Virus record (IMG/VR): IMGVR_UViG_3300048625_000299
Location: 1-64,000 of that record
Direction: 5' to 3' (one strand)
DNA: 64,000 bases
Shown here piece by piece: positions 22,985-34,831 of the stretch (the stretch's first letter is position 1; every line of letters starts with the position of its first letter). The notes below the pieces were generated by a model that saw only the letters and a list, made by a program, of their open reading frames with translations, was not told the origin of the DNA and did not search any database. Made by a program: the position numbers and the translations under genes.

Positions 22985-23386
22985 ATGACTCCATTTGATT
23001 TTGTAAACGCTATTAATATGTCCAAGAAGGACCTGATGACAGGTTCTGAGGACGACGTCCAAGCTGAAAAGGACTACGTCCCATTCGTCGTTAACCGCTC
23101 ATTGTCGTATTTTCCAGATACACTGATGTATGCAAATGAGATTAACCAGTATGGCGACCTCGACAAAAAGCTTCAATTCCACTTCCTGCTAAATAGTATT
23201 CGACCGGGAAAACGTTTTTCGAAATGGGTAAAAAAGGAAGAAAGTGCAGATCTAGAACTTGTTATGCAACACTTTAAGTATGGCATCGACAAGGCCAAGC
23301 AAGCGCTACCATTATTATCTGATGAACAACTATCCATTATAAGAACTATACAAACAAGTGGAGTTGAAAATGACAAATATACTTGA
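22985..23386 (+). CDS. gp62: clamp loader small subunit
   Basis: YVPFVVNRSLSYFPD, KRFSKW. Confidence 0.93.
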   Translation: MTPFDFVNAINMSKKDLMTGSEDDVQAEKDYVPFVVNRSLSYFPDTLMYANEINQYGDLDKKLQFHFLLNSIRPGKRFSKWVKKEESADLELVMQHFKYGIDKAKQALPLLSDEQLSIIRTIQTSGVENDKYT

Positions 23387-23768
23387 CTCATTAGTCGAGG
23401 TGAGGCTTGCAAAAGAAGATGATTTTTTAAAAGTACGTGAAACATTAACGCGAATCGGAGTCGCATCGAAGAAAGATAGAATTCTATTTCAATCGTGTCA
23501 CATTCTGCATAAGCAGGGAAAATACTACATCGTTCACTTTAAAGAACTCTTTGCTTTGGACGGTAAGCCAACAAATATCTCAGACGATGATTTATCAAGA
23601 CGCAATACAATTGCAAATCTAATTGCTGAGTGGGGATTGGTGACATTGGTAGATGAACTGAAATCGAAAGACCCAGTTTCACCACTATCACAAATAAAGG
23701 TACTTCCATTCAAAGAAAAGAATGAATGGGAATTGGTAGCCAAATACAACATTGGTCATAAAAAATAA
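23370..23768 (+). CDS. regA: translational repressor
   Basis: FLKVRETLTRIG, CHILHKQGKYYIVHFKELF. Confidence 0.97.
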   Translation: MTNILDSLVEVRLAKEDDFLKVRETLTRIGVASKKDRILFQSCHILHKQGKYYIVHFKELFALDGKPTNISDDDLSRRNTIANLIAEWGLVTLVDELKSKDPVSPLSQIKVLPFKEKNEWELVAKYNIGHKK

Positions 23769-24240: not shown

Positions 24241-24253
24241 TTTACAAAAACTG

Positions 24254-24283
24254 TTGACTAGAGATATAATTTAGATATATACT
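24254..24283 (+). promoter_or_regulatory. sigma70-type promoter of the leader/tRNA island
   Basis: TTGACT-N18-TATACT. Confidence 0.6.
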
Positions 24284-24315
24284 AGACAAATATTAATCTT
24301 ACTTAAAAGAAACAA

Positions 24316-24432
24316 ATGTTCTCCATAGTCGTATCCACAACAAAACATGAGCAACCGAGCTATCTCAGCTTGGCCGCACGCTCATGCTTTATTGGTAATG
24401 GACGCGATTGGGCTAGCCGGGGAACCATGTAA
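24316..24432 (+). CDS. putative attenuator leader peptide (38 aa, all 20 amino acids)
   Basis: MFSIVVSTTKHEQPSYLSLAARSCFIGNGRDWASRGTM between a promoter and a terminator. Confidence 0.6.
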   Translation: MFSIVVSTTKHEQPSYLSLAARSCFIGNGRDWASRGTM

Positions 24433-24460
24433 CTGTCACTGTAAGTAACTAGAAACAAGG

Positions 24461-24497
24461 AACCCCAGGCATCGAAAGATCCTGGGGTTTTTTATTT
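24461..24497 (+). terminator. intrinsic terminator (attenuator candidate)
   Basis: AACCCCAGG...CCTGGGGTT followed by T-tract. Confidence 0.85.
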
Positions 24498-24513: not shown

Positions 24514-24683
24514 TTGACCAGAATGATGTTCTGGAATATAGTTTACGAATCGACTGAATTAATTTTTGATCGATCATGTTGATAAGATTGTTGTTCTGTA
24601 TTACAATCGAGTCTTCGGCAGATGAGTTAGTTGAAAAATTAATTACAAATGCTGTTGACTTTGATCTTGTATTGAACTACAAT
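24514..24683 (+). promoter_or_regulatory. tandem sigma70-like promoters
   Basis: Three TGTTGA-led boxes paired with TATAGT, TACAAT and TACAAT. Confidence 0.5.
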
Positions 24684-24790
24684 TGAGTCTGAGATAATTT
24701 TGCATTAGAGATCATCGAGTCTCTTAGCAGTAAAGGTTCTTTCACAATTTGTGGATGGTGGTTTCTGTAAGGGCTTGTTCTCTTACAGAG

Positions 24791-24918
24791 GCCATACCAA
24801 AATATGCTTACGCACATACTGCCGCAATTAGAGCGGTTGTTATCTGCGGTGGTTCTGACAGACTGCAAAAAGTCGACGGGTCAGCGTTGATGAACGTATG
24901 AGCATGTTTTGATATGGC
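24791..24918 (+). ncRNA. long-stem structured element S1
   Basis: GCCATACCAAAATATGCTTA / TGAGCATGTTTTGATATGGC terminal stem. Confidence 0.5.
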
Positions 24919-24921
24919 TAT

Positions 24922-24997
24922 GGTGTGTTCGTCTATCGGTTTAGGACGCTGCCCTTTCAAGGCGGAAAGACGAGTTCGATTCTCGTACGCACTACCA
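24922..24997 (+). tRNA. tRNA-Glu(TTC)
   Basis: Cloverleaf, TTCGA loop, CCA. Confidence 0.92.
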
Positions 24998-25119
24998 TTA
25001 ATTAAAATCTCTGTAAGCTCGGAGGCACAGTACATGCGTTATGTAACTATACTAATACGCCGTAATCGATCGTAAAGCGGTTGAGGTATAGCAAATAGTG
25101 CAGAGATTTTAATTAATGG
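24995..25119 (+). ncRNA. long-stem structured element S2
   Basis: CCATTAATTAAAATCTCTG / CAGAGATTTTAATTAATGG. Confidence 0.55.
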
Positions 25120-25123
25120 AAAT

Positions 25124-25200
25124 GCTTCGTTAGCTCAGTTGGTTAGAGCGCATGCCTGTCACGCATGAGGCCGTCGGTTCGAGCCCGATACGGGGCGCCA
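25124..25200 (+). tRNA. tRNA-Asp(GTC)
   Basis: Canonical cloverleaf, CCA. Confidence 0.95.
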
Positions 25201-25209
25201 AGTTATTTT

Positions 25210-25283
25210 ACCCGGATAGTTAAATGGTATAACGTGCGCTTGATAAGCGCTTATCGCAAGTTCGATTCTTGCTCTGGGTACCA
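25210..25283 (+). tRNA. tRNA-Ile(GAT)
   Basis: Cloverleaf, CCA. Confidence 0.9.
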
Positions 25284-25291
25284 AGTTTTAT

Positions 25292-25367
25292 ACCGTAGAG
25301 ATCCTCTGATGGGGATACCTCACTGTCTATGAGGATGTGGCGGGTTTGATTCCCGTCTACGGTGCCA
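25292..25367 (+). tRNA. tRNA-Asp(GTC), atypical
   Basis: All four arms pair; non-canonical D and T loops. Confidence 0.75.
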
Positions 25368-25371
25368 GTTT

Positions 25372-25442
25372 TAGAATAGTTACAGCAACACACAAAGAAC
25401 ACCAAACTTTTAATTTGACATGTTCGTCAACGCTATTCTGTT
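25372..25442 (+). ncRNA. stem-cassette RNA A (Lys-UUU anticodon-loop-like cargo)
   Basis: TAGAATAG-TTAC-AGCAA ... CTATTCTG-TT. Confidence 0.75.
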
Positions 25443-25448
25443 ATATTT

Positions 25449-25523
25449 GGGGACAGTAGTGGGCTACGGTTCTCCCTTGCAAGGAGGATGTCTAGAAGGA
25501 TTCGATTTCCTCGGTCTCCACCA
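25449..25523 (+). tRNA. tRNA-Ala(TGC), minimal D-arm
   Basis: G3:U70, TGC loop, CCA. Confidence 0.7.
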
Positions 25524-25532
25524 ATTTTTTAT

Positions 25533-25607
25533 ACTGCGTTCGACTTCAGGTGAGGTCATCACCCTTTCAAGGTGACTAGACGGGTTCGATACCCGTACGC
25601 AGTACCA
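25533..25607 (+). tRNA. tRNA-Glu(TTC)
   Basis: Cloverleaf, CCA. Confidence 0.9.
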
Positions 25608-25612
25608 GTTTT

Positions 25613-25687
25613 CGGTTGTAAGCTTTGATGGCGAAGTACCCGGCTCTTACCCGGATTAACGGAGTTCGATTCTCCGACGACCGACCA
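25613..25687 (+). tRNA. tRNA-Lys(CTT)
   Basis: Cloverleaf, CCA. Confidence 0.85.
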
Positions 25688-25691
25688 GTTT

Positions 25692-25813
25692 TAGGATACT
25701 TGCAGCAATGACTTAAAAGTCAGTAGGTTCGATTCCTACATTTGGAGCTTTCCAAATCCGTCGTAAGGTACGACAAACGATTGAAACTCGTTCAACTAAA
25801 AAGGTATCCTGTT
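25692..25813 (+). ncRNA. stem-cassette RNA B (permuted tRNA-Phe-like cargo)
   Basis: TAGGATAC-TTGC-AGCAA ... GTATCCTG-TT; cargo order V, T, acceptor, D, anticodon(GAA). Confidence 0.8.
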
Positions 25814-25821
25814 GTATTTGT

Positions 25822-25896
25822 AGGGGGCTTGTCGTCTGGTGATGACACTACGCTTTGACCGTAGGAAGATGAGTTCGATCCTCATGCCCCCCGCCA
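25822..25896 (+). tRNA. tRNA-Gln(TTG)
   Basis: Cloverleaf, CCA. Confidence 0.85.
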
Positions 25897-25929
25897 GTTT
25901 TTGTTTAACTAATTTAATGGAGGCAGTCT

Positions 25930-26064
25930 ATGAAAAAGACGAAACCGATCGTGCGCGAACGTAACTGCTTCGTTCGATTAGCACTATTCCGTAAAGCAGG
26001 ATCGCACCGCAAGTCTAACAAGGCATTGCGTAAAGCGATCAACCAATCATCGTTGGGTTTATAG
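25930..26064 (+). CDS. small basic protein (44 aa)
   Basis: GGAGG RBS; MKKTKPIVRERN...KAGSHRKSNK; stop lies inside tRNA-Lys. Confidence 0.6.
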   Translation: MKKTKPIVRERNCFVRLALFRKAGSHRKSNKALRKAINQSSLGL

Positions 26065-26131
26065 TTTAACGGCAAAAACATCTGGCTTTTAACCAGTAAG
26101 AGTCTCGGTTCGAATCCGAGTAGACCCACCA
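26055..26131 (+). tRNA. tRNA-Lys(TTT)
   Basis: Cloverleaf, CCA. Confidence 0.92.
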
Positions 26132-26210
26132 TATGAAAGCATACTACCGAAGTTGGTTCGGTTAGACAGGGAGATCCAATTGCCTATGTCGTTAGTGTGT
26201 TTTTATATGG
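26129..26210 (+). ncRNA. long-stem structured element S3
   Basis: CCATATGAAAGCATACTA / TAGTGTGTTTTTATATGG. Confidence 0.55.
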
Positions 26211-26273
26211 TACGTAATTTGAGTACAATGGTCACACGCCCTTGCTTAGATTACAAACGCCATAATAATTTAT

Positions 26274-26349
26274 TCCATCTTAGTATTCTCGGTGAGTACG
26301 CCCGGCTGTTAACCGGAGAAGGTTGGTTCGAATCCAACAGATGGAGCCA
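26274..26349 (+). tRNA. tRNA-Asn(GTT)
   Basis: Cloverleaf, CCA. Confidence 0.85.
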
Positions 26350-26354
26350 GTTAT

Positions 26355-26413
26355 GGGGCAAAAAGCGGATTCTGTCCAATGAATCTTTTGCAGCACACTG
26401 TAATGCCCCGCCA
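26355..26413 (+). ncRNA. 59-nt D-armless tRNA-like mini RNA
   Basis: GGGGCA/TGCCCC-GCCA acceptor plus two hairpins. Confidence 0.5.
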
Positions 26414-26417
26414 AATT

Positions 26418-26481
26418 TAGGATCCTTTCAGCAAAACTTATACTTTCACTTTTGGCTGTGAAAAGCAAAGCGGATCCTGTT
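26418..26481 (+). ncRNA. stem-cassette RNA C
   Basis: TAGGATCC-TTTC-AGCAA ... GGATCCTG-TT. Confidence 0.75.
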
Positions 26482-26487
26482 GAACAT

Positions 26488-26565
26488 GCCCACGTAGTGC
26501 AATTGGTAGGAGACAACGGTCTTAGAAGCCGAACAGTGTCGGTTCGAATCCGACCGTGGGCACCA
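26488..26565 (+). tRNA. tRNA-Leu(TAG), short variable loop
   Basis: Cloverleaf, A73, CCA. Confidence 0.88.
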
Positions 26566-26568
26566 AAT

Positions 26569-26637
26569 TTATACACAGATGTTGGTTCGATTCCAACCCT
26601 GATGAAGAGTAGCATAATATGGCAATGCAGTGTATAA
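26569..26637 (+). ncRNA. stand-alone permuted tRNA-elbow mimic
   Basis: TTATACAC / T-arm / short linker / D-arm / GTGTATAA. Confidence 0.55.
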
Positions 26638-26688
26638 TCCAAGCCTCGCGCTGACTTGTCGCGTATAATGAGATAAATTACAAGTCAC

Positions 26689-26791
26689 TTTTCTAGAGCA
26701 TATCGCGGCTGAGGCTAGGCCGTTATGTGGATCATAGCTGGGCCTTTCGGCTTGGTCGCCAGTTCAATTCTGGTAGATGTGTTCTAGAAAA
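26689..26791 (+). ncRNA. cloverleaf-like element S4 with extended terminal stem
   Basis: 16-bp closing stem, D-like arm, GCCAG-TTCAATT-CTGGT T-arm, no CCA. Confidence 0.5.
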
Positions 26792-26795
26792 GTTT

Positions 26796-26870
26796 GGGCT
26801 GATAGTGATAATGGGAGCACAGTGGCTTTGCAAGCCTCGGGTCGGGGTTCGATCCCCCGTCGGTCCACCA
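26796..26870 (+). tRNA. tRNA-Ala(TGC)
   Basis: G3:U70, CCA. Confidence 0.88.
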
Positions 26871-26879
26871 AATTTTAAT

Positions 26880-26956
26880 CCGTCCGTAGCACAATTGGAG
26901 AATGTTCCGTCCTACGAAGTCGAGAGGTGGGGGTTCGAATCCCTCCGGACGGACCA
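26880..26956 (+). tRNA. tRNA-Arg(ACG)
   Basis: Cloverleaf with weak anticodon stem, CCA. Confidence 0.82.
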
Positions 26957-27105
26957 TACTATAGTGTATTCTTCGTCATATGCGGGGTTTCAGGTTCCAC
27001 GTCAAATGTGCCAGAATGAGAATAGTCCTGCAGGTTAATGCTCAGGGTAACACATTAATACTTACAGACAGGTTGACACTTGTTTGGGAATGCATTATAA
27101 TATGG
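26954..27105 (+). ncRNA. long-stem structured element S5
   Basis: CCATACTATAGTGTATTCT / GGAATGCATTATAATATGG. Confidence 0.5.
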
Positions 27106-27110
27106 TTTAT

Positions 27111-27183
27111 GCGGGGTTAGTTTAGTGGTAAAACACTTTCCTTCCAAGTAAGAGTTGCGGGTTCGATTCCCGCACCCCGCTCC
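27111..27183 (+). tRNA. tRNA-Gly(TCC), no encoded CCA
   Basis: Canonical cloverleaf ending TCC-C. Confidence 0.9.
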
Positions 27184-27207
27184 CTTGAGTCGATGTCAAG
27201 ACTCGAA
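27182..27207 (+). repeat. 26-nt direct repeat, copy 1
   Basis: CCCTTGAGTCGATGTCAAGACTCGAA, identical to 28690-28715. Confidence 0.9.
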
Positions 27208-27223
27208 ACTTATAAATAAAAGT

Positions 27224-27763
27224 ATGGAAAAAACATACTATACAATTTATAAGATAACGAATCGGATTAATGGCAAGATCTATATTGGATCGCATAAGAC
27301 CAAAAATCTGAATGACAACTATATGGGTTCTGGAAAATACTTAAAGTATGCCCAAGACAAATATGGTATTGAAAAGTTTGAAAAAGAAATATTGTTCGTA
27401 TTTGATACGGCGCAAGAGATGTACGCTAAGGAAGCGGAAATTGTCAATGTTGAGTTCTTAGCTGAGCATAACACTTACAACATTAAAGTTGGAGGGTTTG
27501 GCGGTTGGGATCACATTAATAATGATGTAGAATTTCGTACGCAGAAAAATCAGCTAGCAAGGGCACGAGCTCAAGCTGCAGGGGCTTCGGATAAAGCAAA
27601 GTTATACAACACTGAACGGAGACGTCAGTATGATCTGAATCCAGCACGATGCGCTTCATGTAGCCAACCGCTTGATTTTTTAAAGCGCAAGAATAAATTC
27701 TGTGGGCATAGTTGTTCAGCTAAGTTGACCAACACCACTAGAGTTCGCAAATCGAACAAGTAA
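27224..27763 (+). CDS. GIY-YIG (Seg-like) homing endonuclease
   Basis: YTIYKITN...KIYIGSH, YMGSG, YN motif; late promoter at 27211. Confidence 0.9.
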   Translation: MEKTYYTIYKITNRINGKIYIGSHKTKNLNDNYMGSGKYLKYAQDKYGIEKFEKEILFVFDTAQEMYAKEAEIVNVEFLAEHNTYNIKVGGFGGWDHINNDVEFRTQKNQLARARAQAAGASDKAKLYNTERRRQYDLNPARCASCSQPLDFLKRKNKFCGHSCSAKLTNTTRVRKSNK

Positions 27764-27767
27764 GTTT

Positions 27768-27829
27768 TAGGATAGTTACCGCAATCAAAAAGCTAACTAT
27801 GGTTGTCTAGCGACAAAAGCTATCCTGTT
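27768..27829 (+). ncRNA. stem-cassette RNA D
   Basis: TAGGATAG-TTAC-CGCAA ... CTATCCTG-TT. Confidence 0.75.
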
Positions 27830-27836
27830 GATTAAT

Positions 27837-27918
27837 GGATGAGATGCTCTAATGGTAGGGCAGCGGGCTGTAACCCCGTGGCTTCGGCAAGTAGGTTCGA
27901 TCCCTACCTCATCCACCA
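27837..27918 (+). tRNA. tRNA-Tyr(GTA)
   Basis: Class II cloverleaf, CCA. Confidence 0.9.
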
Positions 27919-28104
27919 TTTAAGTGACCAGTTTCCGTAACAACTAGAGATGACTGGATCCATCATGATGAACAGTTACGGACGAAGCGTGGGAGTGGAA
28001 GAAGGTCTTGTTGTGTCTCCCGAAAATAAATGACGAAAGTCTTAGCGACAACGAGTAATATCAGTATAACCTAAGGGCGATGGCAAGCCTCTGATAGCCT
28101 TTAT

Positions 28105-28191
28105 GGACGTGTAGGAAAATTGGTAACCCCAGGAGACTGTAAATCTTCCGCCCGCAAGGCACTACTGGTTCGACTCCAGTCGCGTCCACCA
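28105..28191 (+). tRNA. tRNA-Tyr(GTA)
   Basis: Class II cloverleaf, CCA. Confidence 0.88.
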
Positions 28192-28193
28192 AA

Positions 28194-28376
28194 TTAATCG
28201 AATACAAATCTACAGTTGATTTGTTTTAACTGTCCGTCGAGTTTGAATTCAGTTTCGACTTTCGGATAGCAATCGGCAAATGTGCCAACGCAAGTAGACG
28301 TTTTAGTCTCTTTGTAAGGTTGACCATCAGCTAGCTTGTAAAGCAGTTTGAGGTTGTATTCATCATCATATGCCAT
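28194..28376 (-). CDS. small antisense-oriented protein (60 aa)
   Basis: GGAG upstream of ATG on the minus strand; exactly fills the gap between two tRNAs. Confidence 0.5.
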   Translation of the reverse strand: MAYDDEYNLKLLYKLADGQPYKETKTSTCVGTFADCYPKVETEFKLDGQLKQINCRFVFD

Positions 28377-28388
28377 AGAAATATTTAT

Positions 28389-28466
28389 CTCCGATTCGCC
28401 TAGTCTGGTATGGCACTTCGTTTGGGACGAAGAATAACGGGAGTTCAAATCTCTCATCGGAGACCA
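28389..28466 (+). tRNA. tRNA-Pro(TGG)
   Basis: Cloverleaf, CCA. Confidence 0.9.
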
Positions 28467-28618
28467 AGAATTAGTCGGAAAGCAAGAGCCGAAAAGTAAA
28501 TAGTAGGCGACCTAGCCACCTCGGTCGTCTTTGTAGTGTATACTGCGTCAGGGAGCCTGGAAGGGTAACTTGAGAAACACTGGGGTAAGAATCCCAATTG
28601 ATGGTGAGCGCAAATTTC

Positions 28619-28691
28619 CAGGGGGTATGATAGTGGTAGTCGCCGAGGTTTGGAACCTTGTAGTGGGAGTTCGATTCTCCCTCCCCTGACC
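28619..28691 (+). tRNA. tRNA-Pro(TGG), no encoded CCA
   Basis: Cloverleaf ending ACC-C. Confidence 0.85.
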
Positions 28692-28715
28692 CTTGAGTCG
28701 ATGTCAAGACTCGAA
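28690..28715 (+). repeat. 26-nt direct repeat, copy 2
   Basis: Identical to 27182-27207. Confidence 0.9.
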
Positions 28716-28726
28716 CGATTATAAAT

Positions 28727-29389
28727 ATGTGTATGTATTACACTGTTTATAAAACGACGAATAAGATTAATGGCAAGATCTATATTGGATCACATAAGAC
28801 CAAAAATCTTAATGATAATTACCTGGGTTCAGGTAAGTATTTGAAGCGTGCCATAGAAAAGTATGGAGTAGATTCTTTCACTAGGGAAATACTGTTCATA
28901 TTTGAAACAGCAGAGGAAATGTATGCTAAAGAGGCGGAGCTTGTGAACGCAGAGTTCCTAACTGAAGAAAATACATACAACCTCAAGGTTGGAGGTTTTG
29001 GTGGGTTTGACTATATAAATTCCAACCCCGAAAAATACCTAACGCCCAAGAGGCTTGCAGCGCTGATGCCTGGACATGAGTTGCAAAGGCGGCTGTGGGA
29101 AAAATATTATTCCGATCCTGCGTTTAGAGCCAAGCGCCAAGAGCAATCTAGACATGCTCTAAACGTAGCTAGAACAAAATCGCGTGCTCCCTTCAAAGGA
29201 CGCAAGCATTCGGATGTTGTAAAACAAAAAATAGCTGCAAAGGCTAGAGAAAGATCTGCAGATAATCCACAAGGAAACTCCCAGTATGGGACGATATGGA
29301 TTACAGATGGTGTTGAAAATAAGAAGATTAATAAAACTGATGTCTTACCAGATGGTTGGTATAGGGGCAGAGTTTTTAAAAAAGTATAA
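28727..29389 (+). CDS. GIY-YIG (Seg-like) homing endonuclease with NUMOD3-like segment
   Basis: YTVYKTTN...KIYIGSH; FKGRKHS; WITDG...GWYRGR; late promoter at 28720. Confidence 0.9.
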   Translation: MCMYYTVYKTTNKINGKIYIGSHKTKNLNDNYLGSGKYLKRAIEKYGVDSFTREILFIFETAEEMYAKEAELVNAEFLTEENTYNLKVGGFGGFDYINSNPEKYLTPKRLAALMPGHELQRRLWEKYYSDPAFRAKRQEQSRHALNVARTKSRAPFKGRKHSDVVKQKIAAKARERSADNPQGNSQYGTIWITDGVENKKINKTDVLPDGWYRGRVFKKV

Positions 29390-29390
29390 T

Positions 29391-29468
29391 GTCTGGGTGG
29401 CAGAGCGGCCCATTGCAACGGATTGCAAATCCGTAAAGTCGTCGGTTCAAATCCGACCCCAGATTCCA
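29391..29468 (+). tRNA. tRNA-Cys(GCA)
   Basis: U73, CCA. Confidence 0.9.
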
Positions 29469-29476
29469 ATTTTAAT

Positions 29477-29550
29477 GCGTGGTTAGTTTAATGGTAAAAT
29501 CAGACGTTGCCAACGTTTAGTTAAGGGTTCGATTCCCTTACCCCGCACCA
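29477..29550 (+). tRNA. tRNA-Gly(GCC)
   Basis: Cloverleaf, CCA. Confidence 0.88.
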
Positions 29551-29556
29551 GTTTAT

Positions 29557-29632
29557 GCTCCTTTCGTATAGTGATTTATTACATCGGTTTTGTAGTCCGA
29601 GAACAGCAGTTTGATTCTGCTAGGGAGCTCCA
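29557..29632 (+). tRNA. tRNA-Thr(TGT), atypical
   Basis: Cloverleaf, TTTGA T-loop, CCA. Confidence 0.78.
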
Positions 29633-29640
29633 GTTTATTT

Positions 29641-29716
29641 GCTCGCGAAGTATTAGTTGGTGGTATGCCGCTTTCGTAATGCGGAGGATCGGGTTCGAGG
29701 CCTGACGTGAGCACCA
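29641..29716 (+). tRNA. tRNA-Thr(CGT)
   Basis: Cloverleaf, CCA. Confidence 0.8.
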
Positions 29717-29720
29717 AAGT

Positions 29721-29940
29721 TTTGTAAGTGTCAGCAAGTGCAGTCACGCTAGTGATGGTAAGTTCGAACTACCTAACTAGTAAAAGGGGACGGGTTCAAC
29801 TCCCGGCTGATCGGAAGATCGGTGCAGATTGGTTGCTAACTGGACAGGTACCCAAGTGATATCCATCGCGTGACGGGGTCAGGCTAGGCGGCCGGTAGGT
29901 CCTGACTAAATCTACGATAAACGTGACGTAGGCTTACAAA
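29721..29940 (+). ncRNA. 220-nt structured RNA X with two T-loop-like hairpins
   Basis: TTTGTAAG-TGTC-AGCAA ... CTTACAAA; GTCACG/CGTGAC helix. Confidence 0.55.
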
Positions 29941-29949
29941 TTTAATTAT

Positions 29950-30024
29950 GGAGTAGTTAGTTTAGTGGCAAAACCGCGGGTTGTGATTCCGCTATCACGG
30001 GTTCGATTCCCGTACTTCTCCCCA
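29950..30024 (+). tRNA. tRNA-His(GTG)
   Basis: G-1:C73, CCA. Confidence 0.9.
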
Positions 30025-30141
30025 TATGAAAGTATTCTTGGTATAAGTCAAAGCGGAAGAAGAGACCCACGTGGATGCATACGCAACGGTCTCAGAGCTC
30101 AGTCTCCTTCTAGGCCTGCATTCGAGAGTGCTTTTATATGG
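30022..30141 (+). ncRNA. long-stem structured element S6
   Basis: CCATATGAAAGTATTCT / AGAGTGCTTTTATATGG. Confidence 0.55.
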
Positions 30142-30146
30142 CATAT

Positions 30147-30234
30147 GCCTCGGTGTTGGAATTTGGTAGACAAGCTAGAATGAGAGTCTAGTATCCGAAA
30201 GGATGTGTGGGTTCGATTCCCATCTGAGGCACCA
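30147..30234 (+). tRNA. tRNA-Leu(GAG)
   Basis: Class II cloverleaf, CCA. Confidence 0.9.
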
Positions 30235-30249
30235 ATTAAAAAGTACATT

Positions 30250-30325
30250 GCCTGTGTAGCTCCAATGGTAGAGCAGTGGATTGAAAATCCATGTGTTGCT
30301 GGTTCGAGTCCAGCCATAGGCACCA
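30250..30325 (+). tRNA. tRNA-Phe(GAA)
   Basis: Canonical, CCA. Confidence 0.95.
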
Positions 30326-30336
30326 AGTTTGACCAT

Positions 30337-30456
30337 TAGGTTCATTTCAGCAATCAAAATAATCTTTCTTAGAAAAAGAGGGTCTGGGTTCGAATCCCAG
30401 CGCGGAGTTGGTCTTCCGTGTGGTGTAAGGGTAGCACGAAAAAAGTTGAACCTGTT
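30337..30456 (+). ncRNA. stem-cassette RNA E (permuted tRNA, TAG anticodon)
   Basis: TAGGTTCA-TTTC-AGCAA ... TGAACCTG-TT; cargo order anticodon, T, acceptor, D. Confidence 0.82.
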
Positions 30457-30470
30457 AAAATAAATGCAAT

Positions 30471-30547
30471 GGCTCAGTAGTTCCAATTGGCAGAACGGCG
30501 GATTCCAAATCCGCGTGTTGGAGGTTCGAATCCTTCCTGGGTCGCCA
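30471..30547 (+). tRNA. tRNA-Trp(CCA)
   Basis: Canonical, G73, CCA; U11-A24. Confidence 0.95.
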
Positions 30548-30554
30548 AAAGTTT

Positions 30555-30656
30555 TAGGATAGTTACAGCAAAACAAAACGCTTGTCATTGGTTGACAATT
30601 TGCCTTCTAAGCAAACCTAGCAGGTTCAATTCCTGCAGCAAAACAACTATCCTGTT
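30555..30656 (+). ncRNA. stem-cassette RNA F (acceptor-less tRNA-Arg(TCT)-like cargo)
   Basis: TAGGATAG-TTAC-AGCAA ... CTATCCTG-TT; D, anticodon and T arms in normal order. Confidence 0.8.
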
Positions 30657-30665
30657 GATTATCAC

Positions 30666-30756
30666 GGAGAGCGAAGCAGACAGGCGCGCTGCCACCGCCT
30701 TGAAAGCGGCTGGATCCTGAAAGGGATTGGATTTCGAGTATACCCGCTCTCCGCCA
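30666..30756 (+). tRNA. tRNA-Ser(TGA), atypical T-arm
   Basis: Class II, G73, CCA. Confidence 0.8.
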
Positions 30757-30763
30757 AAATTAT

Positions 30764-30878
30764 GTCGCGATGGTGTAATGGTAGCACGCTATAAAAGGTG
30801 ATCCTGATTAGGATACGTGCAGCATACATTTTCCACTGTCAATGGAGATGCCCAGGTTCGATTCCTGGTCGCGACGCC
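30764..30878 (+). tRNA. tRNA-Asp(GTC) interrupted by a 42-nt insertion (30789-30830)
   Basis: GTCGCGA/TCGCGAC acceptor with D, anticodon and T arms intact; insert carries cassette motifs in swapped order. Confidence 0.75.
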
Positions 30879-30883
30879 TCTTT

Positions 30884-30989
30884 TAGGATGAATGCAGCAA
30901 CATAAAAACTCTTCCACCATTCAGGGAGGCCGGCCCGCAGGGGGCATGTCGTTGGGTTCGAGTCCCGGTCTTAGACACATCATCCTGTT
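30884..30989 (+). ncRNA. stem-cassette RNA H (T-arm-containing cargo)
   Basis: TAGGATGA-ATGC-AGCAA ... TCATCCTG-TT. Confidence 0.78.
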
Positions 30990-30998
30990 ATTCAATGT

Positions 30999-31074
30999 TC
31001 CCTCTTCGCCAAGTTGGTAAGGCATCGGATTTTGATTCCGACATTCGGTGGTTCGAGTCCATCAGGGGGAGCCA
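30999..31074 (+). tRNA. tRNA-Gln(TTG)
   Basis: Canonical, CCA. Confidence 0.93.
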
Positions 31075-31221
31075 AGTTTTTGCAGTCTTAGCCTGGAGCT
31101 AGGGTAAAGGGTGTTGCGGGTGGCATCGAGACTCTACGGAGATTCGAGCGTTAAAGTTATCACCGATAAACATCGTAGCGCAACTTCAATCAATATGTGG
31201 AGCCTGCTGCAGAATTAATAT

Positions 31222-31310
31222 GGAAGATACAGCTGTGTGGTCACAGCATCCGCCTGGAACGCGGACGGTTGGTTCTGCTGGCCGGAGTTCGACTCTCCTA
31301 TCTTCCTCCA
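31222..31310 (+). tRNA. tRNA-Ser(GGA)
   Basis: Class II, CCA. Confidence 0.82.
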
Positions 31311-31434
31311 TATAAAAGCTCTTTGAGCAGCTACACTGGAGTTCATCAAGTAACCGCCAAGTCGACTACGCGGTAAACGTTGCCAGGAAGTAGGGCTGCC
31401 ATGGATTCAAGTACCGCAGAGAGCCTCTATATGG
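31308..31434 (+). ncRNA. long-stem structured element S7
   Basis: CCATATAAAAGCTCT / AGAGCCTCTATATGG. Confidence 0.55.
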
Positions 31435-31520
31435 ACGATTACCTAGTCAGGGACTAGCACTGATTCGAAACCAGTTGGATTCAGAAATGGGTTGGGGTTC
31501 GATACCTCAGTCGTCCGCCA
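31433..31520 (+). tRNA. tRNA-Ser(CGA)
   Basis: Class II, G73, CCA. Confidence 0.85.
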
Positions 31521-31542
31521 TTCACAAATTAAGGGGATACCG

Positions 31543-31677
31543 ATGAAACGAAAAGATGTATTCGATAAGGCATATGGTAGTGTCCCCCATGAAGTTGGCT
31601 TCAATGTCGACCTAGATATTAATGTATTCAGAGGATTCAGGTATTATTACTTGAAGATGATACGTTTCTTTAGATAG
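31543..31677 (+). CDS. small hypothetical protein
   Basis: AAGGGG RBS, 44 aa. Confidence 0.55.
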   Translation: MKRKDVFDKAYGSVPHEVGFNVDLDINVFRGFRYYYLKMIRFFR

Positions 31678-31684
31678 GAGCATT

Positions 31685-31933
31685 ATGTCAAATGAGCAAC
31701 ACAAAGAACAACATTCCAAACGTCTGCATCAAAAAGAGACGCATGTTGCAAAGCAAGTAAAGATCGCTAAGGCGTATGGCATATCTGTTAAAGAGCCACA
31801 CAAGCTAGCAAAGCATAATGCAATGAATTGTGGAGATCCAAACTGCTTGATGTGTATGAATCCCCGCAAAGCATTTAATGAGAAGACGATTCAAGAACGT
31901 CGATTTGATCAGCCTTTAGCTCAAGGAGAGTAA
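31685..31933 (+). CDS. conserved phage hypothetical protein (CxxxxCxxC)
   Basis: AGGAG RBS; CGDPNCLMCMNPRK. Confidence 0.7.
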   Translation: MSNEQHKEQHSKRLHQKETHVAKQVKIAKAYGISVKEPHKLAKHNAMNCGDPNCLMCMNPRKAFNEKTIQERRFDQPLAQGE

Positions 31934-31934
31934 A

Positions 31935-32609
31935 ATGAAAAAGGTAATCGAGATTCGCGCTGCTGAAGGCGGCGACGATAGTAAATTATTCGTAAAGGAC
32001 CTAGCGCAAAGCTACGTCAAGTTCGCAGACCGCAAGGGCTGAACTACCCGCCTGATAGGTGAGTACCTCGGAGAGCTTCATATTGAAGTCAAGGGGTCTG
32101 ACTTATCCGGACTAGAAAACGAAGCAGGCGGGCATCGAATCCAAAGAGTTCCTCCGACGGAACGAAAAGGTAGAGTACATACTAGCACCGTCACGGTCGC
32201 TATCATTGATAGCGCATCCGAGATCAAGACGGAATCTATACCAGACCATGAATTAAAAGTGGAGTGGTATAGCGGGACGGGGGCTGGTGGGCAACATCGA
32301 AACAAGCATCAAAACAGTTGTAGACTAACACACATTCCAACTGGAATAGTAACTACTGCACAATGTCGTAGTAGAGAGAATAGTCTGAACGAAGCACGAT
32401 CGTCATTGACACATCGTGTGAACTCGTTGACTAAGGATGCGTTTCATAGTAATGTAGCCAGTAACAGAAAACAACAAGTTGGTTCTGGGATGCGTGGCGA
32501 TAAGATCAGGACATATCGTTTCCAAGATGATCGTGTGCAAGACCATAGAACCGATAAAGTAGTCAGCTTGAAGAAAGTGATGGCTGGCGCGTTTGATCTG
32601 TTTTGGTAA
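31935..32609 (+). CDS. class I peptide release factor-like protein with in-frame TGA at codon 36
   Basis: EIRAAEGG, HRIQRVPPTERKGRVHTS, GAGGQHRNK, KIRTY in one frame across TGA 32040-32042. Confidence 0.85.
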
Positions 32610-32628
32610 ACACAACAAAGGAAGTATA

Positions 32629-32820
32629 ATGGCAAATCGTATTAACGAGTTTGAAGAAGTAGTTTCAGCAATGCGTGCTGATTTCGAAAAGTTCTATGAT
32701 AAAGAAACTAATGCTGCTGGCGCTCGCGTCCGTAAGCATTGCCAAGCGCTGGCTGTTCTCTGTAAGGAAGTTCGTAAGGACGTCACTGAAGTGAAAGCTG
32801 CACGCGCTGCTGCAAAGTAA
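32629..32820 (+). CDS. histone H1-like (Hc1-type) small protein
   Basis: KFYDKETNAAGARVRK...KEVRKDV. Confidence 0.65.
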   Translation: MANRINEFEEVVSAMRADFEKFYDKETNAAGARVRKHCQALAVLCKEVRKDVTEVKAARAAAK

Positions 32821-32905
32821 TTCTGCTTGCAAGCTGATCTCGGTGCTCCCGTTCTCCCGAGTTAGAATAGCTGATAATGTTTCAGTAAGACGGGGCCAAA
32901 TTTAA

Positions 32906-32995
32906 GGTGCGGTCCCATAATGGTATTGGAGCGGATTGCTAATCCGTCGGTCGGCGAAAGCCGGCTTCTGAGTTCGAGTCTCAGTCGCACCGCCA
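32906..32995 (+). tRNA. tRNA-Ser(GCT)
   Basis: Class II, CCA. Confidence 0.9.
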
Positions 32996-33000
32996 GTTCT

Positions 33001-33090
33001 CCCGCTGTAGCTCAAGGAGAGCAGGGGGTCTTATAAGCCCTTAATCTAGATAAGGTCCAGGATGTGGTTCGATTCCACACAGCGGGACCA
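33001..33090 (+). tRNA. tRNA-Ile(TAT) with long variable region
   Basis: CTTATAA loop, A73, CCA. Confidence 0.8.
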
Positions 33091-33097
33091 AAAGTTT

Positions 33098-33300
33098 TAG
33101 GATCCATGCAGCAACATAAAATGCATTGAAAGCCTCGTGTTGGTGGTGCAAGTCCACCCTCCCTCACTAAGGGCACTTTATGGAGTGACCCGCCATACTA
33201 CTAAAGGATCGCAACCTGTAGTAATATCCAACGTATGGTATTGTGCCCTTAGTGAGGGAGTAGCTCAAGTAGTAGAGCAGAGTAAAAAGCGGATCCTGTT
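33098..33300 (+). ncRNA. stem-cassette RNA I (YrlA-like permuted module with 18-bp acceptor)
   Basis: TAGGATCC-ATGC-AGCAA ... GGATCCTG-TT; T-arm, CTCCCTCACTAAGGGCAC/GTGCCCTTAGTGAGGGAG, D-arm. Confidence 0.82.
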
Positions 33301-33307
33301 GTTTAAG

Positions 33308-33385
33308 GCCCAGGTAGTGCAATTGGTAGGAGACAACGGTTTCAAACGCCGTACAGTGTGGGTTCGAATCCCATCCTGGGCACCA
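33308..33385 (+). tRNA. tRNA-Leu(CAA), short variable loop
   Basis: Cloverleaf, CCA. Confidence 0.88.
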
Positions 33386-33400
33386 AATTGAAAGTTAATT

Positions 33401-33625
33401 ATGTTTAAGGTTTACTGGACAAGTGATGGTGGTGTACATGCAAGTACGTTCGACGGCTTGTCGGAAGCTATTAAAGAATGTGAAGTGTTACGTAAGGATG
33501 GAATGACCTTTGTTACGATGGTATCAGAGAATCCAAACTCAGTAGGCAAGCCTGGAGTAGATGCTGTCGTCGATGGCAAATGTCCAGACGGTGTAGATTA
33601 CACTTGGAAGAAGAGAAGAATATGA
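33401..33625 (+). CDS. conserved hypothetical protein
   Basis: FVTMVSENPNSVGKPGVD...YTWKKRR. Confidence 0.7.
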   Translation: MFKVYWTSDGGVHASTFDGLSEAIKECEVLRKDGMTFVTMVSENPNSVGKPGVDAVVDGKCPDGVDYTWKKRRI

Positions 33626-34329
33626 TCGGTCTAATTGGAAGAGGCGTTGTGGGTGGCGCAATCGAAAACGCCTACACTAAATTAAATCGTCCGCTTGTCG
33701 TTGTTGATAGGGGCGATGATTTCCGCGCACTCGACCAATGTACCATGATTTGGGTAGCTGTCCCCGAGTGGGAAATTGCTAATGTAGCAAGACAGGTCAC
33801 CAACCGCAATGCGCTGTATGTGATTAAGAGCACTGCAGTACCTGCTCAATTCGAAACGCTATTCAAGCGATTTGTATATGTGCCTGAATTTTTGACAGCA
33901 AAGAATGCCAACGCTGATTTCTTCAACCCACCGCTGCTTCCGATCGGAACAGATAATCAGCAAGATGCTGACATGGTGTTGGATGAGATGTTTGCATTGA
34001 ATGTATACTGCTATCATGCTAGATATGTGACAGTCGCTGAAGCGTCTGCCATTAAGTACTACGCAAATTCGTTCCTAGCAACAAAAGTGATATTCAACAA
34101 TCAGTTTGCGAACTATTGTGAAGACATGGGAGTTGAGTGGAATAAGATTGCAAGCGTTCTTGGTGAGGATACCCGACTCGGACATACGCACTGGCAAGTG
34201 CCTGGGCCTGATGGGCTGCCAGGATATGGGGGAGCATGCTTTCCGAAAGATGTCCGTGCATTGGTACATGCTACAGATCGGTTGACATTATTAGAACAAG
34301 TCGATATAATAAACAAATCGATGAGATAA
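33622..34329 (+). CDS. UDP-glucose/GDP-mannose dehydrogenase-like protein
   Basis: GRGVVG, IKST, PEFL, KYYANSFLATKV, GYGGACFPKD. Confidence 0.88.
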   Translation: MIGLIGRGVVGGAIENAYTKLNRPLVVVDRGDDFRALDQCTMIWVAVPEWEIANVARQVTNRNALYVIKSTAVPAQFETLFKRFVYVPEFLTAKNANADFFNPPLLPIGTDNQQDADMVLDEMFALNVYCYHARYVTVAEASAIKYYANSFLATKVIFNNQFANYCEDMGVEWNKIASVLGEDTRLGHTHWQVPGPDGLPGYGGACFPKDVRALVHATDRLTLLEQVDIINKSMR

Positions 34330-34333
34330 CAAT

Positions 34334-34408
34334 CTGGCGTTCGTTCAACGGATAGGACATTTCTCTTCTAAAGAAATTATGGGGGTTCGATTCCCTCACG
34401 CCGGACCA
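34334..34408 (+). tRNA. tRNA-Arg(TCT)
   Basis: Cloverleaf, CCA. Confidence 0.92.
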
Positions 34409-34829: not shown

Positions 34830-34831
34830 AT

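What the first reader, a model, noticed from the sequence alone, without database searches (positions are those of the whole stretch)
24254..24497. Candidate pan-amino-acid attenuator: a 38-codon leader with all 20 amino acids in front of the tRNA island
Seen: a promoter is followed by ORF 24316-24432 (MFSIVVSTTKHEQPSYLSLAARSCFIGNGRDWASRGTM) and then a strong intrinsic terminator. The peptide contains every amino acid and samples different synonymous codons (ATA/ATT, GTC/GTA, CTC/TTG, GCC/GCA/GCT, CGC/CGG, TCC/TCA/AGC). GCCGGGG (24416-24422, last codons) can pair with CCCC(A)GGC (24463-24470) in the terminator 5' arm. Known: ribosome-mediated attenuators use leaders enriched for one amino acid. 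Inference: a ribosome reaching the stop masks the antiterminator, so transcription ends. Stalling at almost any codon, for example after host tRNA cleavage, frees it and switches on the full tRNA set, giving a general sensor of tRNA-pool damage. Caveats: the Shine-Dalgarno is weak, and further sigma70-like promoters lie downstream of the terminator.
Basis: partly seen in the sequence, partly recalled or inferred. Interest (0 to 1): 0.86.

Follow-up and report, generated by a model that had tools for sequence, protein, structure and literature searches.

The report
Translation-sensing terminator before phage tRNA genes
A freshwater T4-like phage and its relatives carry, just ahead of their tRNA gene cluster, a conserved unit made of a promoter, a folded 37-39-codon reading frame and a strong terminator, wired like a ribosome-dependent attenuator; the "all 20 amino acids" feature that drew attention is not conserved, and most relatives also have separate promoters for the tRNA genes.

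Summary
What I added:
- **Conservation:** the same module sits between the dCMP deaminase gene and the first tRNA-Glu in five diverged phage lineages. It is missing in two others.
- **RNA-level constraint:** between the window and a relative, 74 of 140 third codon positions differ in the deaminase gene, yet the leader ORF differs at 0 of 117 bases.
- **Reading frame:** the frame stays open in every lineage, and indels are multiples of three. A chance ORF of this kind appears in 1-2% of shuffles per lineage.
- **Antiterminator:** a G-run near the ORF's end pairs with the terminator's 5' arm about as strongly as the terminator pairs with itself. In the model, only a ribosome on the last 8-10 codons (or, with the footprint assumed, the stop) prevents this.
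- **Controls:** two other terminators in the window show no such upstream complement.

This supports a ribosome-gated terminator.
- Amino-acid variety is 20, 19, 19, 19, 20 and 17 kinds across variants, and the balanced base composition explains part of it.
- No lineage has a good Shine-Dalgarno.
- Promoter-like sites, strong ones in the window's own lineage, lie downstream of the terminator in most lineages.

Verdict: partly supported. It is probably a new variant of attenuation, but no experiment has tested it.

The parts
24254..24283 (+). Promoter of the module: -35 TTGACT, 18-nt spacer, -10 TATACT. The likely transcription start is near 24290.
   Evidence: Both hexamers are conserved in L003 and L171, while the L171 spacer is rewritten. 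An overlapping TTTACA-18-TATAAT site at 24241-24270 is not conserved in L171.
24290..24315 (+). A-rich 5' untranslated region with no clear Shine-Dalgarno (AAAAGAAAC).
   Evidence: Genuine genes of this phage mostly have AGGAG or AAGGA upstream of the start.
24316..24432 (+). 38-codon leader ORF. As RNA it folds into a closed rod.
   Evidence: Fold z-score is -3.2 for the ORF alone. It differs at 0 of 117 bases from L003 and 3 of 117 from L171, whereas third codon positions of the neighbouring deaminase gene differ in 74/140 and 83/138 codons.
24319..24325 (+). Segment 1 (GUUCUCC), which pairs with GGGGAAC at the ORF's 3' end and closes the rod.
   Evidence: MFE structures. All lineages pair a pyrimidine-rich 5' part of the ORF with a purine-rich 3' part.
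24416..24426 (+). Segment 2 (GCCGGGGAACC), the antiterminator strand. It lies 4-14 nt upstream of the stop codon.
   Evidence: duplex with segment 3 is -16.1 kcal/mol, P = 0.057 against shuffles (0.016 in L171); it is masked once the ribosomal A site is at codon 32 or later.
24433..24458 (+). Spacer between the stop codon and the terminator. The motif GUAAGUAACUAGA is shared with lineages A and C.
   Evidence: There are 29-37 nt between the stop and the terminator's C-run in all lineages.
24459..24470 (+). Segment 3 (GGAACCCCAGGC): the terminator's 5' arm plus four upstream bases. It pairs either with segment 2 or with the terminator's 3' arm.
24463..24497 (+). Intrinsic terminator: 7 bp, a bulged C, 3 bp, a GAAA tetraloop, then UUUUUUAUUU.
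   Evidence: -16.2 kcal/mol. The same architecture, with changed stem bases and a GNRA loop, is found in lineages A-E.
24514..24683 (+). Three sigma70-like promoters downstream of the terminator (24514-24542, 24579-24607, 24655-24683).
   Evidence: The middle one is deleted in L003. L171 has two perfect consensus promoters in the equivalent region.
24690..24921 (+). Structured, conserved leader of the tRNA precursor.
   Evidence: Fold z-score -4.0. About 88% identical to L003, with one compensatory hairpin change.
24922..24997 (+). tRNA-Glu, the first of 40 tRNA genes (24922-37641). It is the first tRNA after the module in every lineage that carries the leader ORF.

Best explanation
The module is a ribosome-gated terminator, meaning a transcription attenuator that senses translation. 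It sits at the entrance of the tRNA island.

Transcripts from its own promoter, and from the upstream replication-gene operon, run into a short ORF whose RNA folds on itself. A purine-rich G-run segment lies just upstream of the stop codon. It can pair either with the pyrimidine-rich start of the ORF or with the C-run of the terminator's 5' arm.

- If a ribosome has reached the end of the ORF when the polymerase makes the terminator, it covers the G-run. The terminator then folds, and a roughly 205-nt RNA is released.
- If no ribosome has got that far because translation is slow, stalled or absent, the G-run pairs with the C-run. The polymerase then reads on towards tRNA-Glu and the rest of the array.

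The device therefore reports whether translation is completing on time. It does not report the supply of one amino acid.

Shown here: the anatomy, its conservation, the RNA-level constraint and the thermodynamic competition. Inferred: that the ORF is translated, that termination changes with ribosome position, and what this means for the phage.
For: 1. The module lies between the dCMP deaminase gene and tRNA-Glu in five lineages whose deaminases are only 66-71% identical (W against A-D), with 37-39 codons each.
2. The frame is kept open. The offsets of the conserved core from the ATG are 54, 54, 48 and 51 nt, all multiples of three, although the N-terminal halves are rewritten. An ATG-started ORF of at least 37 codons ending 15-45 nt before the terminator arises in 0.9-2.3% of shuffles per lineage. 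Most other frames carry 1-7 stops.
3. Constraint acts on the nucleotides. The ORF has 0 of 117 changes against L003 and 3 of 117 against L171, while 53-60% of deaminase third positions differ. In L171, the two amino-acid-changing substitutions create a new helix, UAGCCC/GGGCUA, and keep the fold energy.
4. The ORF RNA is more stable than its shuffles in every lineage, with z from -1.6 to -4.2, and its two ends always pair.
5. The duplex between the ORF's 3' end and the terminator's 5' arm is -15.5 to -20.4 kcal/mol, about equal to the terminator hairpins (-15 to -19). P against shuffles is 0.001-0.057 in five of six variants. Lineages A and B differ by matching changes, GGGGGUCU:AGGACCCCC against GGGGGUUCU:AGAACCCCC.
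6. Two control terminators in the same window lack any such complement (P = 0.74 and 0.57).
7. In nascent-RNA partition functions, the C-run is paired to the G-run with probability about 1 (0.42 in B with no ribosome; 0.10-0.38 in B with the A site at codons 19-22). It falls to 0 once the A site is at codon 30-32 or beyond. At the stop itself the modelled footprint leaves 0.35 in L007 and 0.93 in L012.
8. In lineage C, no sigma70-type promoter lies between the terminator and tRNA-Glu, so that tRNA needs read-through.
9. In L006, a 211-codon YhhQ-like gene ends with the same G-run, stop, 29-nt spacer and homologous terminator. This suggests that the ORF's end plus the terminator is the working core.
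Against: - No lineage has a good Shine-Dalgarno, although this phage's genes usually do. Translation has not been shown.
- Promoter-like sites lie downstream of the terminator in lineages W, D and part of A, and the W ones are strong. Read-through could therefore add only part of the array's transcription.
- The element is absent from two relatives with the same gene order, L008 and L013.
- Only about five distinct lineages are available. The RNAalifold covariation term is slightly unfavourable (+2.88), and only 7 of 51 pairs show double changes.
- The antiterminator complement is not significant in lineage D (P = 0.22).
- Loop sequences such as AGUAUU and the core around GGCUCAUGGGAU are frozen across lineages A-D. 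An attenuator does not require that.
- Metatranscriptome contigs gave no usable 3'-end or read-through information.
Confidence: 0.45

Rival explanations
1. The module is a self-contained small gene. About 205 nt of structured RNA is made from its own promoter and always ends at its own terminator. It acts in trans, as a small regulatory RNA and/or as the mRNA of a small protein (a dual-function sRNA). The terminator also simply closes the upstream operon and shields the tRNA promoters.
For: - It has its own conserved promoter and a very strong terminator.
- In most lineages promoters follow directly, so the array does not depend on read-through.
- Nearly every base of the ORF is conserved within the W lineage, including loops.
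- The C-terminal half of the peptide, and the loop sequences, are conserved across A-D.
- Gene callers predicted the ORF as a protein in 14 metagenome variants.
- The terminated leader RNA and leader peptide of a real attenuator can act in trans (Sinorhizobium trpL, PMC7298713, abstract seen).
Against: - A competitor for the terminator's 5' arm that is as strong as the terminator itself would be harmful to a constitutive terminator. Yet it is enriched over chance here and absent at the control terminators.
- The peptide is only 22% identical between W and the other lineages, and its N-terminal half evolves freely.
- No family match was found in PHROGs, and none in Rfam for the ORF (the only sub-threshold hit, 26.4 bits against an 88-bit cut-off, covers the terminator hairpin).
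- L006 keeps the G-run, stop and terminator but not the small ORF.
Confidence: 0.28
2. The module is a riboswitch-like or protein-binding RNA switch. The folded domain closed by the end-to-end helix binds a ligand, a protein or a tRNA. This stabilises the closing helix, holds the G-run and so permits termination. On this reading the ORF is incidental.
For: - The 3' strand of the closing helix doubles as the antiterminator strand, as in OFF-type riboswitches.
- Lineages A-D share a four-helix junction with frozen loop and junction bases.
- No Shine-Dalgarno is present.
Against: - The ORF is kept open, with frame-preserving indels, in all lineages.
- The start codon and the next three codons are left unpaired in lineages A-D, as needed for initiation.
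- The interior fold of W differs from that of A-D, so no common binding pocket exists.
- No T-box or other Rfam family matches the folded domain.
Confidence: 0.12
3. The leader was selected to contain every amino acid, so that loss of any charged tRNA, for example after host anticodon-nuclease attack, stalls the ribosome and switches on the whole phage tRNA set.
For: - Amino-acid variety is high in most variants: 20, 19, 19, 19 and 20 kinds in 37-39 residues, against a null mean of 16.5.
- The modelled antiterminator forms for a ribosome at almost any of codons 1-30 (exception: lineage B, codons 19-22).
- The array downstream encodes tRNAs for all 20 amino acids.
Against: - Lineage D has only 17 kinds, which is the null mean.
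- The closest variant of the window's own peptide has lost Val through two substitutions that preserve the RNA fold rather than the residue.
- Val is missing in lineages A, B and D.
- Balanced base composition already raises variety: the other reading frames give 14-19 kinds.
- With the shared core held fixed, my hand estimates for the variable parts are P of about 0.1-0.3.
- One all-20 ORF among 122 of similar length in the window is about what chance gives.
- The array has its own promoters.
Confidence: 0.1
4. It is a chance ORF in front of an ordinary operon terminator and has no regulatory role.
For: - The 20-amino-acid property alone is within chance for the window.
- The Shine-Dalgarno is weak.
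- The terminator is one of only three strong + strand terminators in the 64 kb, and it closes the replication-gene cluster.
Against: - ORF retention across lineages.
- Extreme nucleotide conservation.
- Significant folding.
- An antiterminator complement that is absent at the control terminators.
Confidence: 0.05

Closest known systems
Leader-peptide transcription attenuators of amino-acid operons (trpL, hisL, thrL, leuL, ilv leaders; from textbook knowledge)
   Same: A short ORF is followed by an intrinsic terminator. Three mutually exclusive pairings (1:2, 2:3, 3:4) are possible. A ribosome at the end of the leader masks segment 2, so the terminator forms. The antiterminator is about as stable as the terminator.
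   Different: There is no run of codons for one amino acid. The downstream genes are tRNAs rather than biosynthetic enzymes. The stop codon lies after segment 2 rather than between segments 1 and 2. At equilibrium 2:3 outcompetes 1:2, so the state without a ribosome may be read-through rather than super-attenuation. Promoters lie downstream of the terminator in most lineages. There is no clear Shine-Dalgarno. The element is phage-encoded.
General translation-stress-sensing upstream ORFs, e.g. toiL of E. coli topAI-yjhQ (PMC12121999) and antibiotic-responsive leader ORFs found by Term-seq (background in PMC5314783)
   Same: In both, a short ORF is proposed to act as a sensor. Ribosomes stalled at different positions within it remodel the downstream RNA structure and relieve premature termination. 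The signal is translation failure in general, not one amino acid.
   Different: toiL works through occlusion of the ribosome-binding site and Rho-dependent termination inside a protein-coding gene, and responds to antibiotics. Here the terminator is intrinsic, the downstream genes are untranslated tRNAs, and no inducer is known.
OFF-type transcriptional riboswitches and T-box leaders
   Same: A folded domain is closed by a helix whose 3' strand is shared with an antiterminator, upstream of a terminator. T-boxes also link tRNA status to read-through.
   Different: No Rfam family, T-box included, matches the folded domain. The interior fold is not conserved between W and A-D. A conserved ORF spans the domain.
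Attenuator-derived or dual-function small RNAs (Sinorhizobium rnTrpL/peTrpL, PMC7298713; SgrS/SgrT type, from own knowledge)
   Same: A short terminated transcript with its own promoter, a strong fold and a small ORF. The released roughly 205-nt RNA could act in trans.
   Different: No target or trans activity is known, and no sequence similarity was found.

Membership tests
Leader-peptide (ribosome-mediated) transcription attenuator | A short leader ORF that is translated | tested here: inconclusive
   The ORF is kept open with frame-preserving indels in five lineages, and its start region is unpaired in lineages A-D. However, the Shine-Dalgarno is weak or absent in all of them, and no translation data exist.
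Leader-peptide (ribosome-mediated) transcription attenuator | An intrinsic terminator between the leader and the downstream genes, on the same strand | tested here: met
   Hairpin 24463-24487 plus T6. Homologous terminators are present in all lineages.
Leader-peptide (ribosome-mediated) transcription attenuator | Mutually exclusive 1:2, 2:3 and 3:4 pairings, with the ribosome at the leader's end masking segment 2 | tested here: met
   Met by computation only: MFE and partition-function folding and duplex energies against shuffles. The control terminators are negative. At the stop-codon position itself, the assumed footprint does not fully mask segment 2 in L007 (0.35) and L012 (0.93). Covariation support is weak because only five lineages are available.
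Leader-peptide (ribosome-mediated) transcription attenuator | A cluster of regulatory codons for the amino acid that is sensed | tested here: not met
   No amino acid is repeated in a run. The 5' segments are merely rich in Ser, Leu, Ile and Thr codons, as expected for a pyrimidine-rich pairing strand.
Leader-peptide (ribosome-mediated) transcription attenuator | The regulated genes depend on read-through, with no promoter between attenuator and genes | tested here: not met
   Promoters are found at 24514, 24579 and 24655 in the window, two perfect consensus promoters in L171, and a 17-nt-spacer promoter in A variants and in D. The feature is met only for tRNA-Glu of lineage C. It is borderline in L007 and in B, where the spacer is 14-15 nt.
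General translation-stress-sensing uORF (toiL type) | Stalls at several different positions in the uORF all relieve termination | tested here: inconclusive
   An equilibrium model gives antiterminator probability of about 1 for A-site codons 1-30 in most lineages; lineage B drops to 0.10-0.38 at codons 19-22. Kinetics and real stalling were not tested.
General translation-stress-sensing uORF (toiL type) | Acts through occlusion of a ribosome-binding site and Rho-dependent termination | tested here: not met
   The downstream genes are tRNAs with no ribosome-binding site, and the terminator is intrinsic.
T-box riboswitch | Stem I specifier loop and the conserved T-box antiterminator sequence (Rfam RF00230) | tested here: not met
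   The permissive and gathering-threshold Rfam scans found only tRNAs and sub-threshold noise.
OFF-type riboswitch | An aptamer core conserved in sequence and architecture across members | tested here: not met
   Lineages A-D share a four-helix junction, but W has a different interior fold.
Trans-acting or dual-function small RNA | An independent transcript with its own promoter and terminator | tested here: met
Trans-acting or dual-function small RNA | A defined trans target or partner | not testable with these tools
   The host is unknown and there is no isolate. The metatranscriptome contigs were uninformative.

The most novel reading that the evidence does not exclude
The phage feeds back on its own tRNA supply. 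A short, amino-acid-diverse leader ORF times ribosome progress against the polymerase. When the host tRNA pool is depleted or cleaved by a defence nuclease, ribosomes lag, the antiterminator forms, and extra transcription enters the 40-tRNA array. That would make this a pan-tRNA damage sensor selected for codon and amino-acid coverage.
Probability: 0.1. Interest if true: 0.9.

Novelty: new variant of a known kind. Interest (0 to 1): 0.6.

Why it matters
Phage tRNA arrays are now seen as counter-measures to host tRNA-cleaving defences (PMC10264068; PMC11555353, abstracts). How their expression is controlled is essentially unknown.

I found no description of an attenuator that reads general translation progress rather than one amino acid and sits at the door of a tRNA array. 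If it works as proposed, it would link tRNA gene transcription directly to translation performance. It would also extend classical attenuation to non-coding target genes and to phages.

The module is only about 250 bp long, so it can be tested directly with reporter fusions. Even if the module turns out to be a stand-alone RNA, it is a strongly constrained and uncatalogued phage RNA.

Tried and rejected
- **GenBank phages, DNA search:** only tRNA hits, so there is no close isolate.
- **Two DNA pattern scans of IMG/VR:** they found only the known lineages plus chance hits in coding regions or in an unrelated high-GC phage.
- **Peptide searches of 5.8 and 1.8 billion proteins:** only two clusters turned up, lineage A variants and one W variant.
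- **PHROGs and Rfam:** PHROGs gave no match and Rfam nothing above any family's cut-off. The best sub-threshold Rfam hit (Rev39_5p_UTR, 26.4 bits against 88) covers only the terminator hairpin.
- **nhmmer profile against all fetched DNA:** one copy per locus and none elsewhere in the window.
- **Metatranscriptome runs:** only assembler contigs were available. A contig break at 24436/24446 and a depth of 110 against 408 cannot be read as transcript ends.
- **Structure-pair counting across W and A-D:** dropped because MAFFT aligns the G-run of W to a different purine block of A-D and shifts the terminator arms.
- **Ideas rejected after inspection:**
  - type I toxin (the peptides are not hydrophobic);
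  - lipoprotein signal (the lipobox is poor);
  - boxA/nut-like antitermination site (only a loose match);
  - tRNA-like or tmRNA element (ARAGORN and Rfam both negative).
- **Resemblances noted but treated as coincidence:** the thrL leader's start (MKRISTT, from my own knowledge) and TnaC-like W-D-P spacing.
Full report
**Observation.** The window is the first 64 kb of a 235-kb IMG/VR contig from a freshwater T4-like myovirus. Its clamp loader is 58% identical to that of Stenotrophomonas phage DLP6 and 57% to Methylophilales phage Melnitz.
- Promoter: TTGACT-18-TATACT at 24254-24283.
- ORF: 24316-24432, encoding the quoted 38-residue peptide with all 20 amino acids.
- Terminator: hairpin 24463-24487 followed by T6 (7 bp, a bulged C, 3 bp, GAAA loop, -16.2 kcal/mol).
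- Pairing: GCCGGGG at 24416-24422 can pair with CCCC(A)GGC at 24463-24470.
- Downstream: 40 tRNA genes from 24922 to 37641 and three further promoters at 24514, 24579 and 24655.

**Is the 20-amino-acid property more than chance?** Taken alone, it is not. The probability is 0.003 with the phage's amino-acid usage and 0.007 with nucleotide shuffles of the ORF. The window holds 122 ORFs of 35-41 codons, and exactly one of them has all 20.

**Relatives.** No GenBank phage matches the region apart from its tRNAs. I used the neighbouring dCMP deaminase as an anchor and fetched IMG/VR and metagenome loci. In relatives whose deaminase is 66-90% identical, the gene is followed by a tRNA array, which starts with tRNA-Glu in all of them except L006. 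Five lineages carry, between the two, a promoter, a 37-39-codon ORF and a strong terminator.
- W: the window, L003/L005 and L171.
- A: L007, L010, L172 and L173.
- B: L011 and L091.
- C: L009 and L043.
- D: L012.

L008 and L013 lack the module. L006 has only its 3' part. A profile search finds one copy per locus and none elsewhere in the window. Protein databases hold only two clusters of this ORF. PHROGs gives no match, and Rfam gives nothing above any family's cut-off for the element.

**What is conserved?** The first answer is the RNA.
- Between the window and L003, 74 of 140 deaminase third codon positions differ, with 69 synonymous codon changes. The leader ORF is identical at all 117 bases.
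- Against L171 the figures are 83 of 138 third positions for the deaminase, but only 3 of 117 bases for the leader. Meanwhile the promoter spacer is rewritten around intact -35 and -10 hexamers.
- Two of those three changes alter amino acids (Val-Val to Ala-Leu). They replace one helix (AGUCGU/GCGAUU) with another (UAGCCC/GGGCUA), and the fold energy is unchanged.
- The ORF RNA alone is more stable than dinucleotide shuffles in every lineage, with z from -1.6 to -4.2. Its pyrimidine-rich 5' part always pairs with its purine-rich 3' part.

The second answer is the open frame.
- The peptide is only 22% identical between W and lineage C, and the N-terminal halves are rewritten among A/B, C and D.
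- Even so, the offsets of the conserved core from the ATG are 54, 54, 48 and 51 nt, all multiples of three.
- The start region is unpaired in lineages A-D.
- A comparable ORF arises in only 0.9-2.3% of shuffles per lineage.

Within the A-D core, 9-10 codons are frozen at synonymous sites. Much of the apparent peptide conservation (EHNNGSWD.F.PSI) may therefore reflect constraint on the RNA.

**Attenuator anatomy.** In W, A, B and C, the best partner for the terminator's 5' arm anywhere in the ORF is the G-run a few bases upstream of the stop codon.
- The duplexes are -15.5 to -20.4 kcal/mol, which matches the terminator hairpins. P against shuffles is 0.001-0.057. Lineage D is weaker, with P = 0.22.
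- Lineages A and B differ by matching changes on both strands.
- The other two strong + strand terminators of the window have no such upstream complement, with P = 0.74 and 0.57.

I folded the nascent RNA up to the terminator loop while masking a ribosome footprint at each codon in turn. The C-run is paired to the G-run with probability about 1. The exceptions are lineage B: 0.42 without a ribosome and 0.10-0.38 with the A site at codons 19-22. The probability falls to 0 once the A site is at codon 30-32 or beyond. With the footprint I assumed (12 nt upstream of the A site), the stop-codon position itself still gives 0.35 in L007 and 0.93 in L012, because the G-run there lies further from the stop. 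The stop codon lies 29-37 nt before the terminator's C-run in every lineage, so a terminating ribosome would not hinder the terminator itself.

In L006, a 211-codon YhhQ-like gene ends with the same arrangement of G-run, stop, 29-nt spacer and homologous terminator. The duplex there is -13.6 against a hairpin of -14.2, with P = 0.06. This suggests that the end of a translated frame plus the terminator is the functional core.

**Most likely mechanism.** The module is a ribosome-gated terminator.
- When a ribosome finishes the ORF on time, it hides the G-run and transcription ends, releasing a roughly 205-nt RNA.
- When ribosomes lag or are absent, the G-run captures the terminator's 5' arm and transcription continues towards tRNA-Glu.

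The anatomy, the conservation and the energetics are shown here. That the ORF is translated, the kinetic outcome and the biological signal are all inferred. One point stays open. At equilibrium 2:3 beats 1:2, so the outcome without any ribosome depends on folding kinetics, which I could not compute.

1. Amino-acid variety is 20 (W), 19 (L171), 19 (A), 19 (B), 20 (C) and 17 (D).
   - The shuffle null is 16.5 because the base composition is an even 25% for each base. The other frames of the same RNA give 14-19 kinds.
   - Val is absent from A, B, D and the closest W variant.
   - Given the shared core, the variable parts add the missing kinds no more often than chance. My hand estimates give P of about 0.1-0.3.
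2. No lineage has a good Shine-Dalgarno, although this phage's genes usually do.
3. Promoters follow the terminator in most lineages.
   - Found: three in the window, two perfect consensus promoters in L171, 17-nt-spacer promoters in part of A and in D.
   - Exceptions: lineage C has none before tRNA-Glu. L007 and B have spacers of only 14-15 nt.
   - Consequence: read-through can add to array transcription but not fully control it.
4. Covariation statistics are weak with five lineages.
5. Metatranscriptome contigs were uninformative.

**Rivals.**
- A stand-alone small RNA or small-protein gene (0.28) explains the unit's own promoter, the downstream promoters and the frozen loops. It does not explain a terminator competitor as strong as the terminator.
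- A riboswitch-like sensor with an incidental ORF (0.12) fits the shared closing-helix/antiterminator strand. It does not fit ORF retention or the different interior fold of W.
- The full pan-amino-acid design (0.10) is a special case of the best model, with little specific support.
- Pure chance (0.05) is excluded by the conservation.

**Comparison with known systems.** The module works like a leader-peptide attenuator but fails two of that family's defining features. It has no cluster of regulatory codons, and promoters lie downstream of the terminator. In concept it is closest to uORFs that sense translation stress in general, such as toiL (PMC12121999). It differs from those in using an intrinsic terminator ahead of tRNA genes in a phage. 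I found no description of such an element. I therefore class it as a new variant of a known kind, of moderate to high interest, awaiting a simple reporter test.

Noticed in passing
window 24690-24921: The region between the downstream promoters and tRNA-Glu is a strongly structured, conserved tRNA-precursor leader (fold z-score -4.0). Its hairpin near 24766-24790 shows a compensatory A>G / U>C change in L003.
   Followed up: partly
L007 4748-4767, L009 4817-4836, L011 4770-4789, L012 3531-3550; window 24744-24760: The motif ACAATTTGGATCAC lies directly 5' of tRNA-Glu in lineages A-C (AAAAATTTGGATCAC in D). UUGGAUCAC matches the beginning of the 16S rRNA 3' tail (from my own knowledge). The window has a related CACAATTTGTGGATGG about 160 nt further upstream of the tRNA. 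It may be a processing signal.
   Followed up: no
L006 4504-5752: A porin-like ORF of about 180 residues and a 211-residue YhhQ-like (queuosine-precursor transporter-like) ORF are inserted between the deaminase gene and the terminator. The YhhQ-like ORF ends with the module's G-run, stop and terminator arrangement.
   Followed up: partly
L006 5760-6250: About 490 nt of non-coding sequence lies between the terminator and the first tRNA (Tyr). No Rfam match was found. It could be another structured RNA.
   Followed up: partly
L003 4505-5056 (also L005): The same porin-like ORF (183 residues, with a signal-peptide-like start) is inserted between the deaminase gene and the leader module in a phage whose deaminase is 90% identical to the window's.
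   Followed up: no
window 31223-31306: Rfam's tRNA model scores 41.7 bits here, but ARAGORN lists no gene at this position. It may be a 41st tRNA or a tRNA-like element.
   Followed up: no
L007 4470-4499 (lineage A variants): An in-frame ATG lies 2 nt after the -10 box, 10 codons upstream of the conserved ATG. Gene callers use it, giving 49-55-residue products. In lineages C and D, the conserved ATG itself sits 3-4 nt after a TATACT box. Leaderless initiation is therefore conceivable.
   Followed up: partly
window 23358-23768: The ORF upstream of the deaminase gene corresponds to a RegA-type translational repressor gene (PF01818 in the L173 counterpart). This gives the gene order clamp loader, regA, cd, leader module, tRNA array.
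   Followed up: no
window 5854-5883 and 42993-43035: These are the only other strong + strand intrinsic terminators in the 64 kb. The first also has a GAAA tetraloop. Neither has an upstream antiterminator complement.
   Followed up: yes
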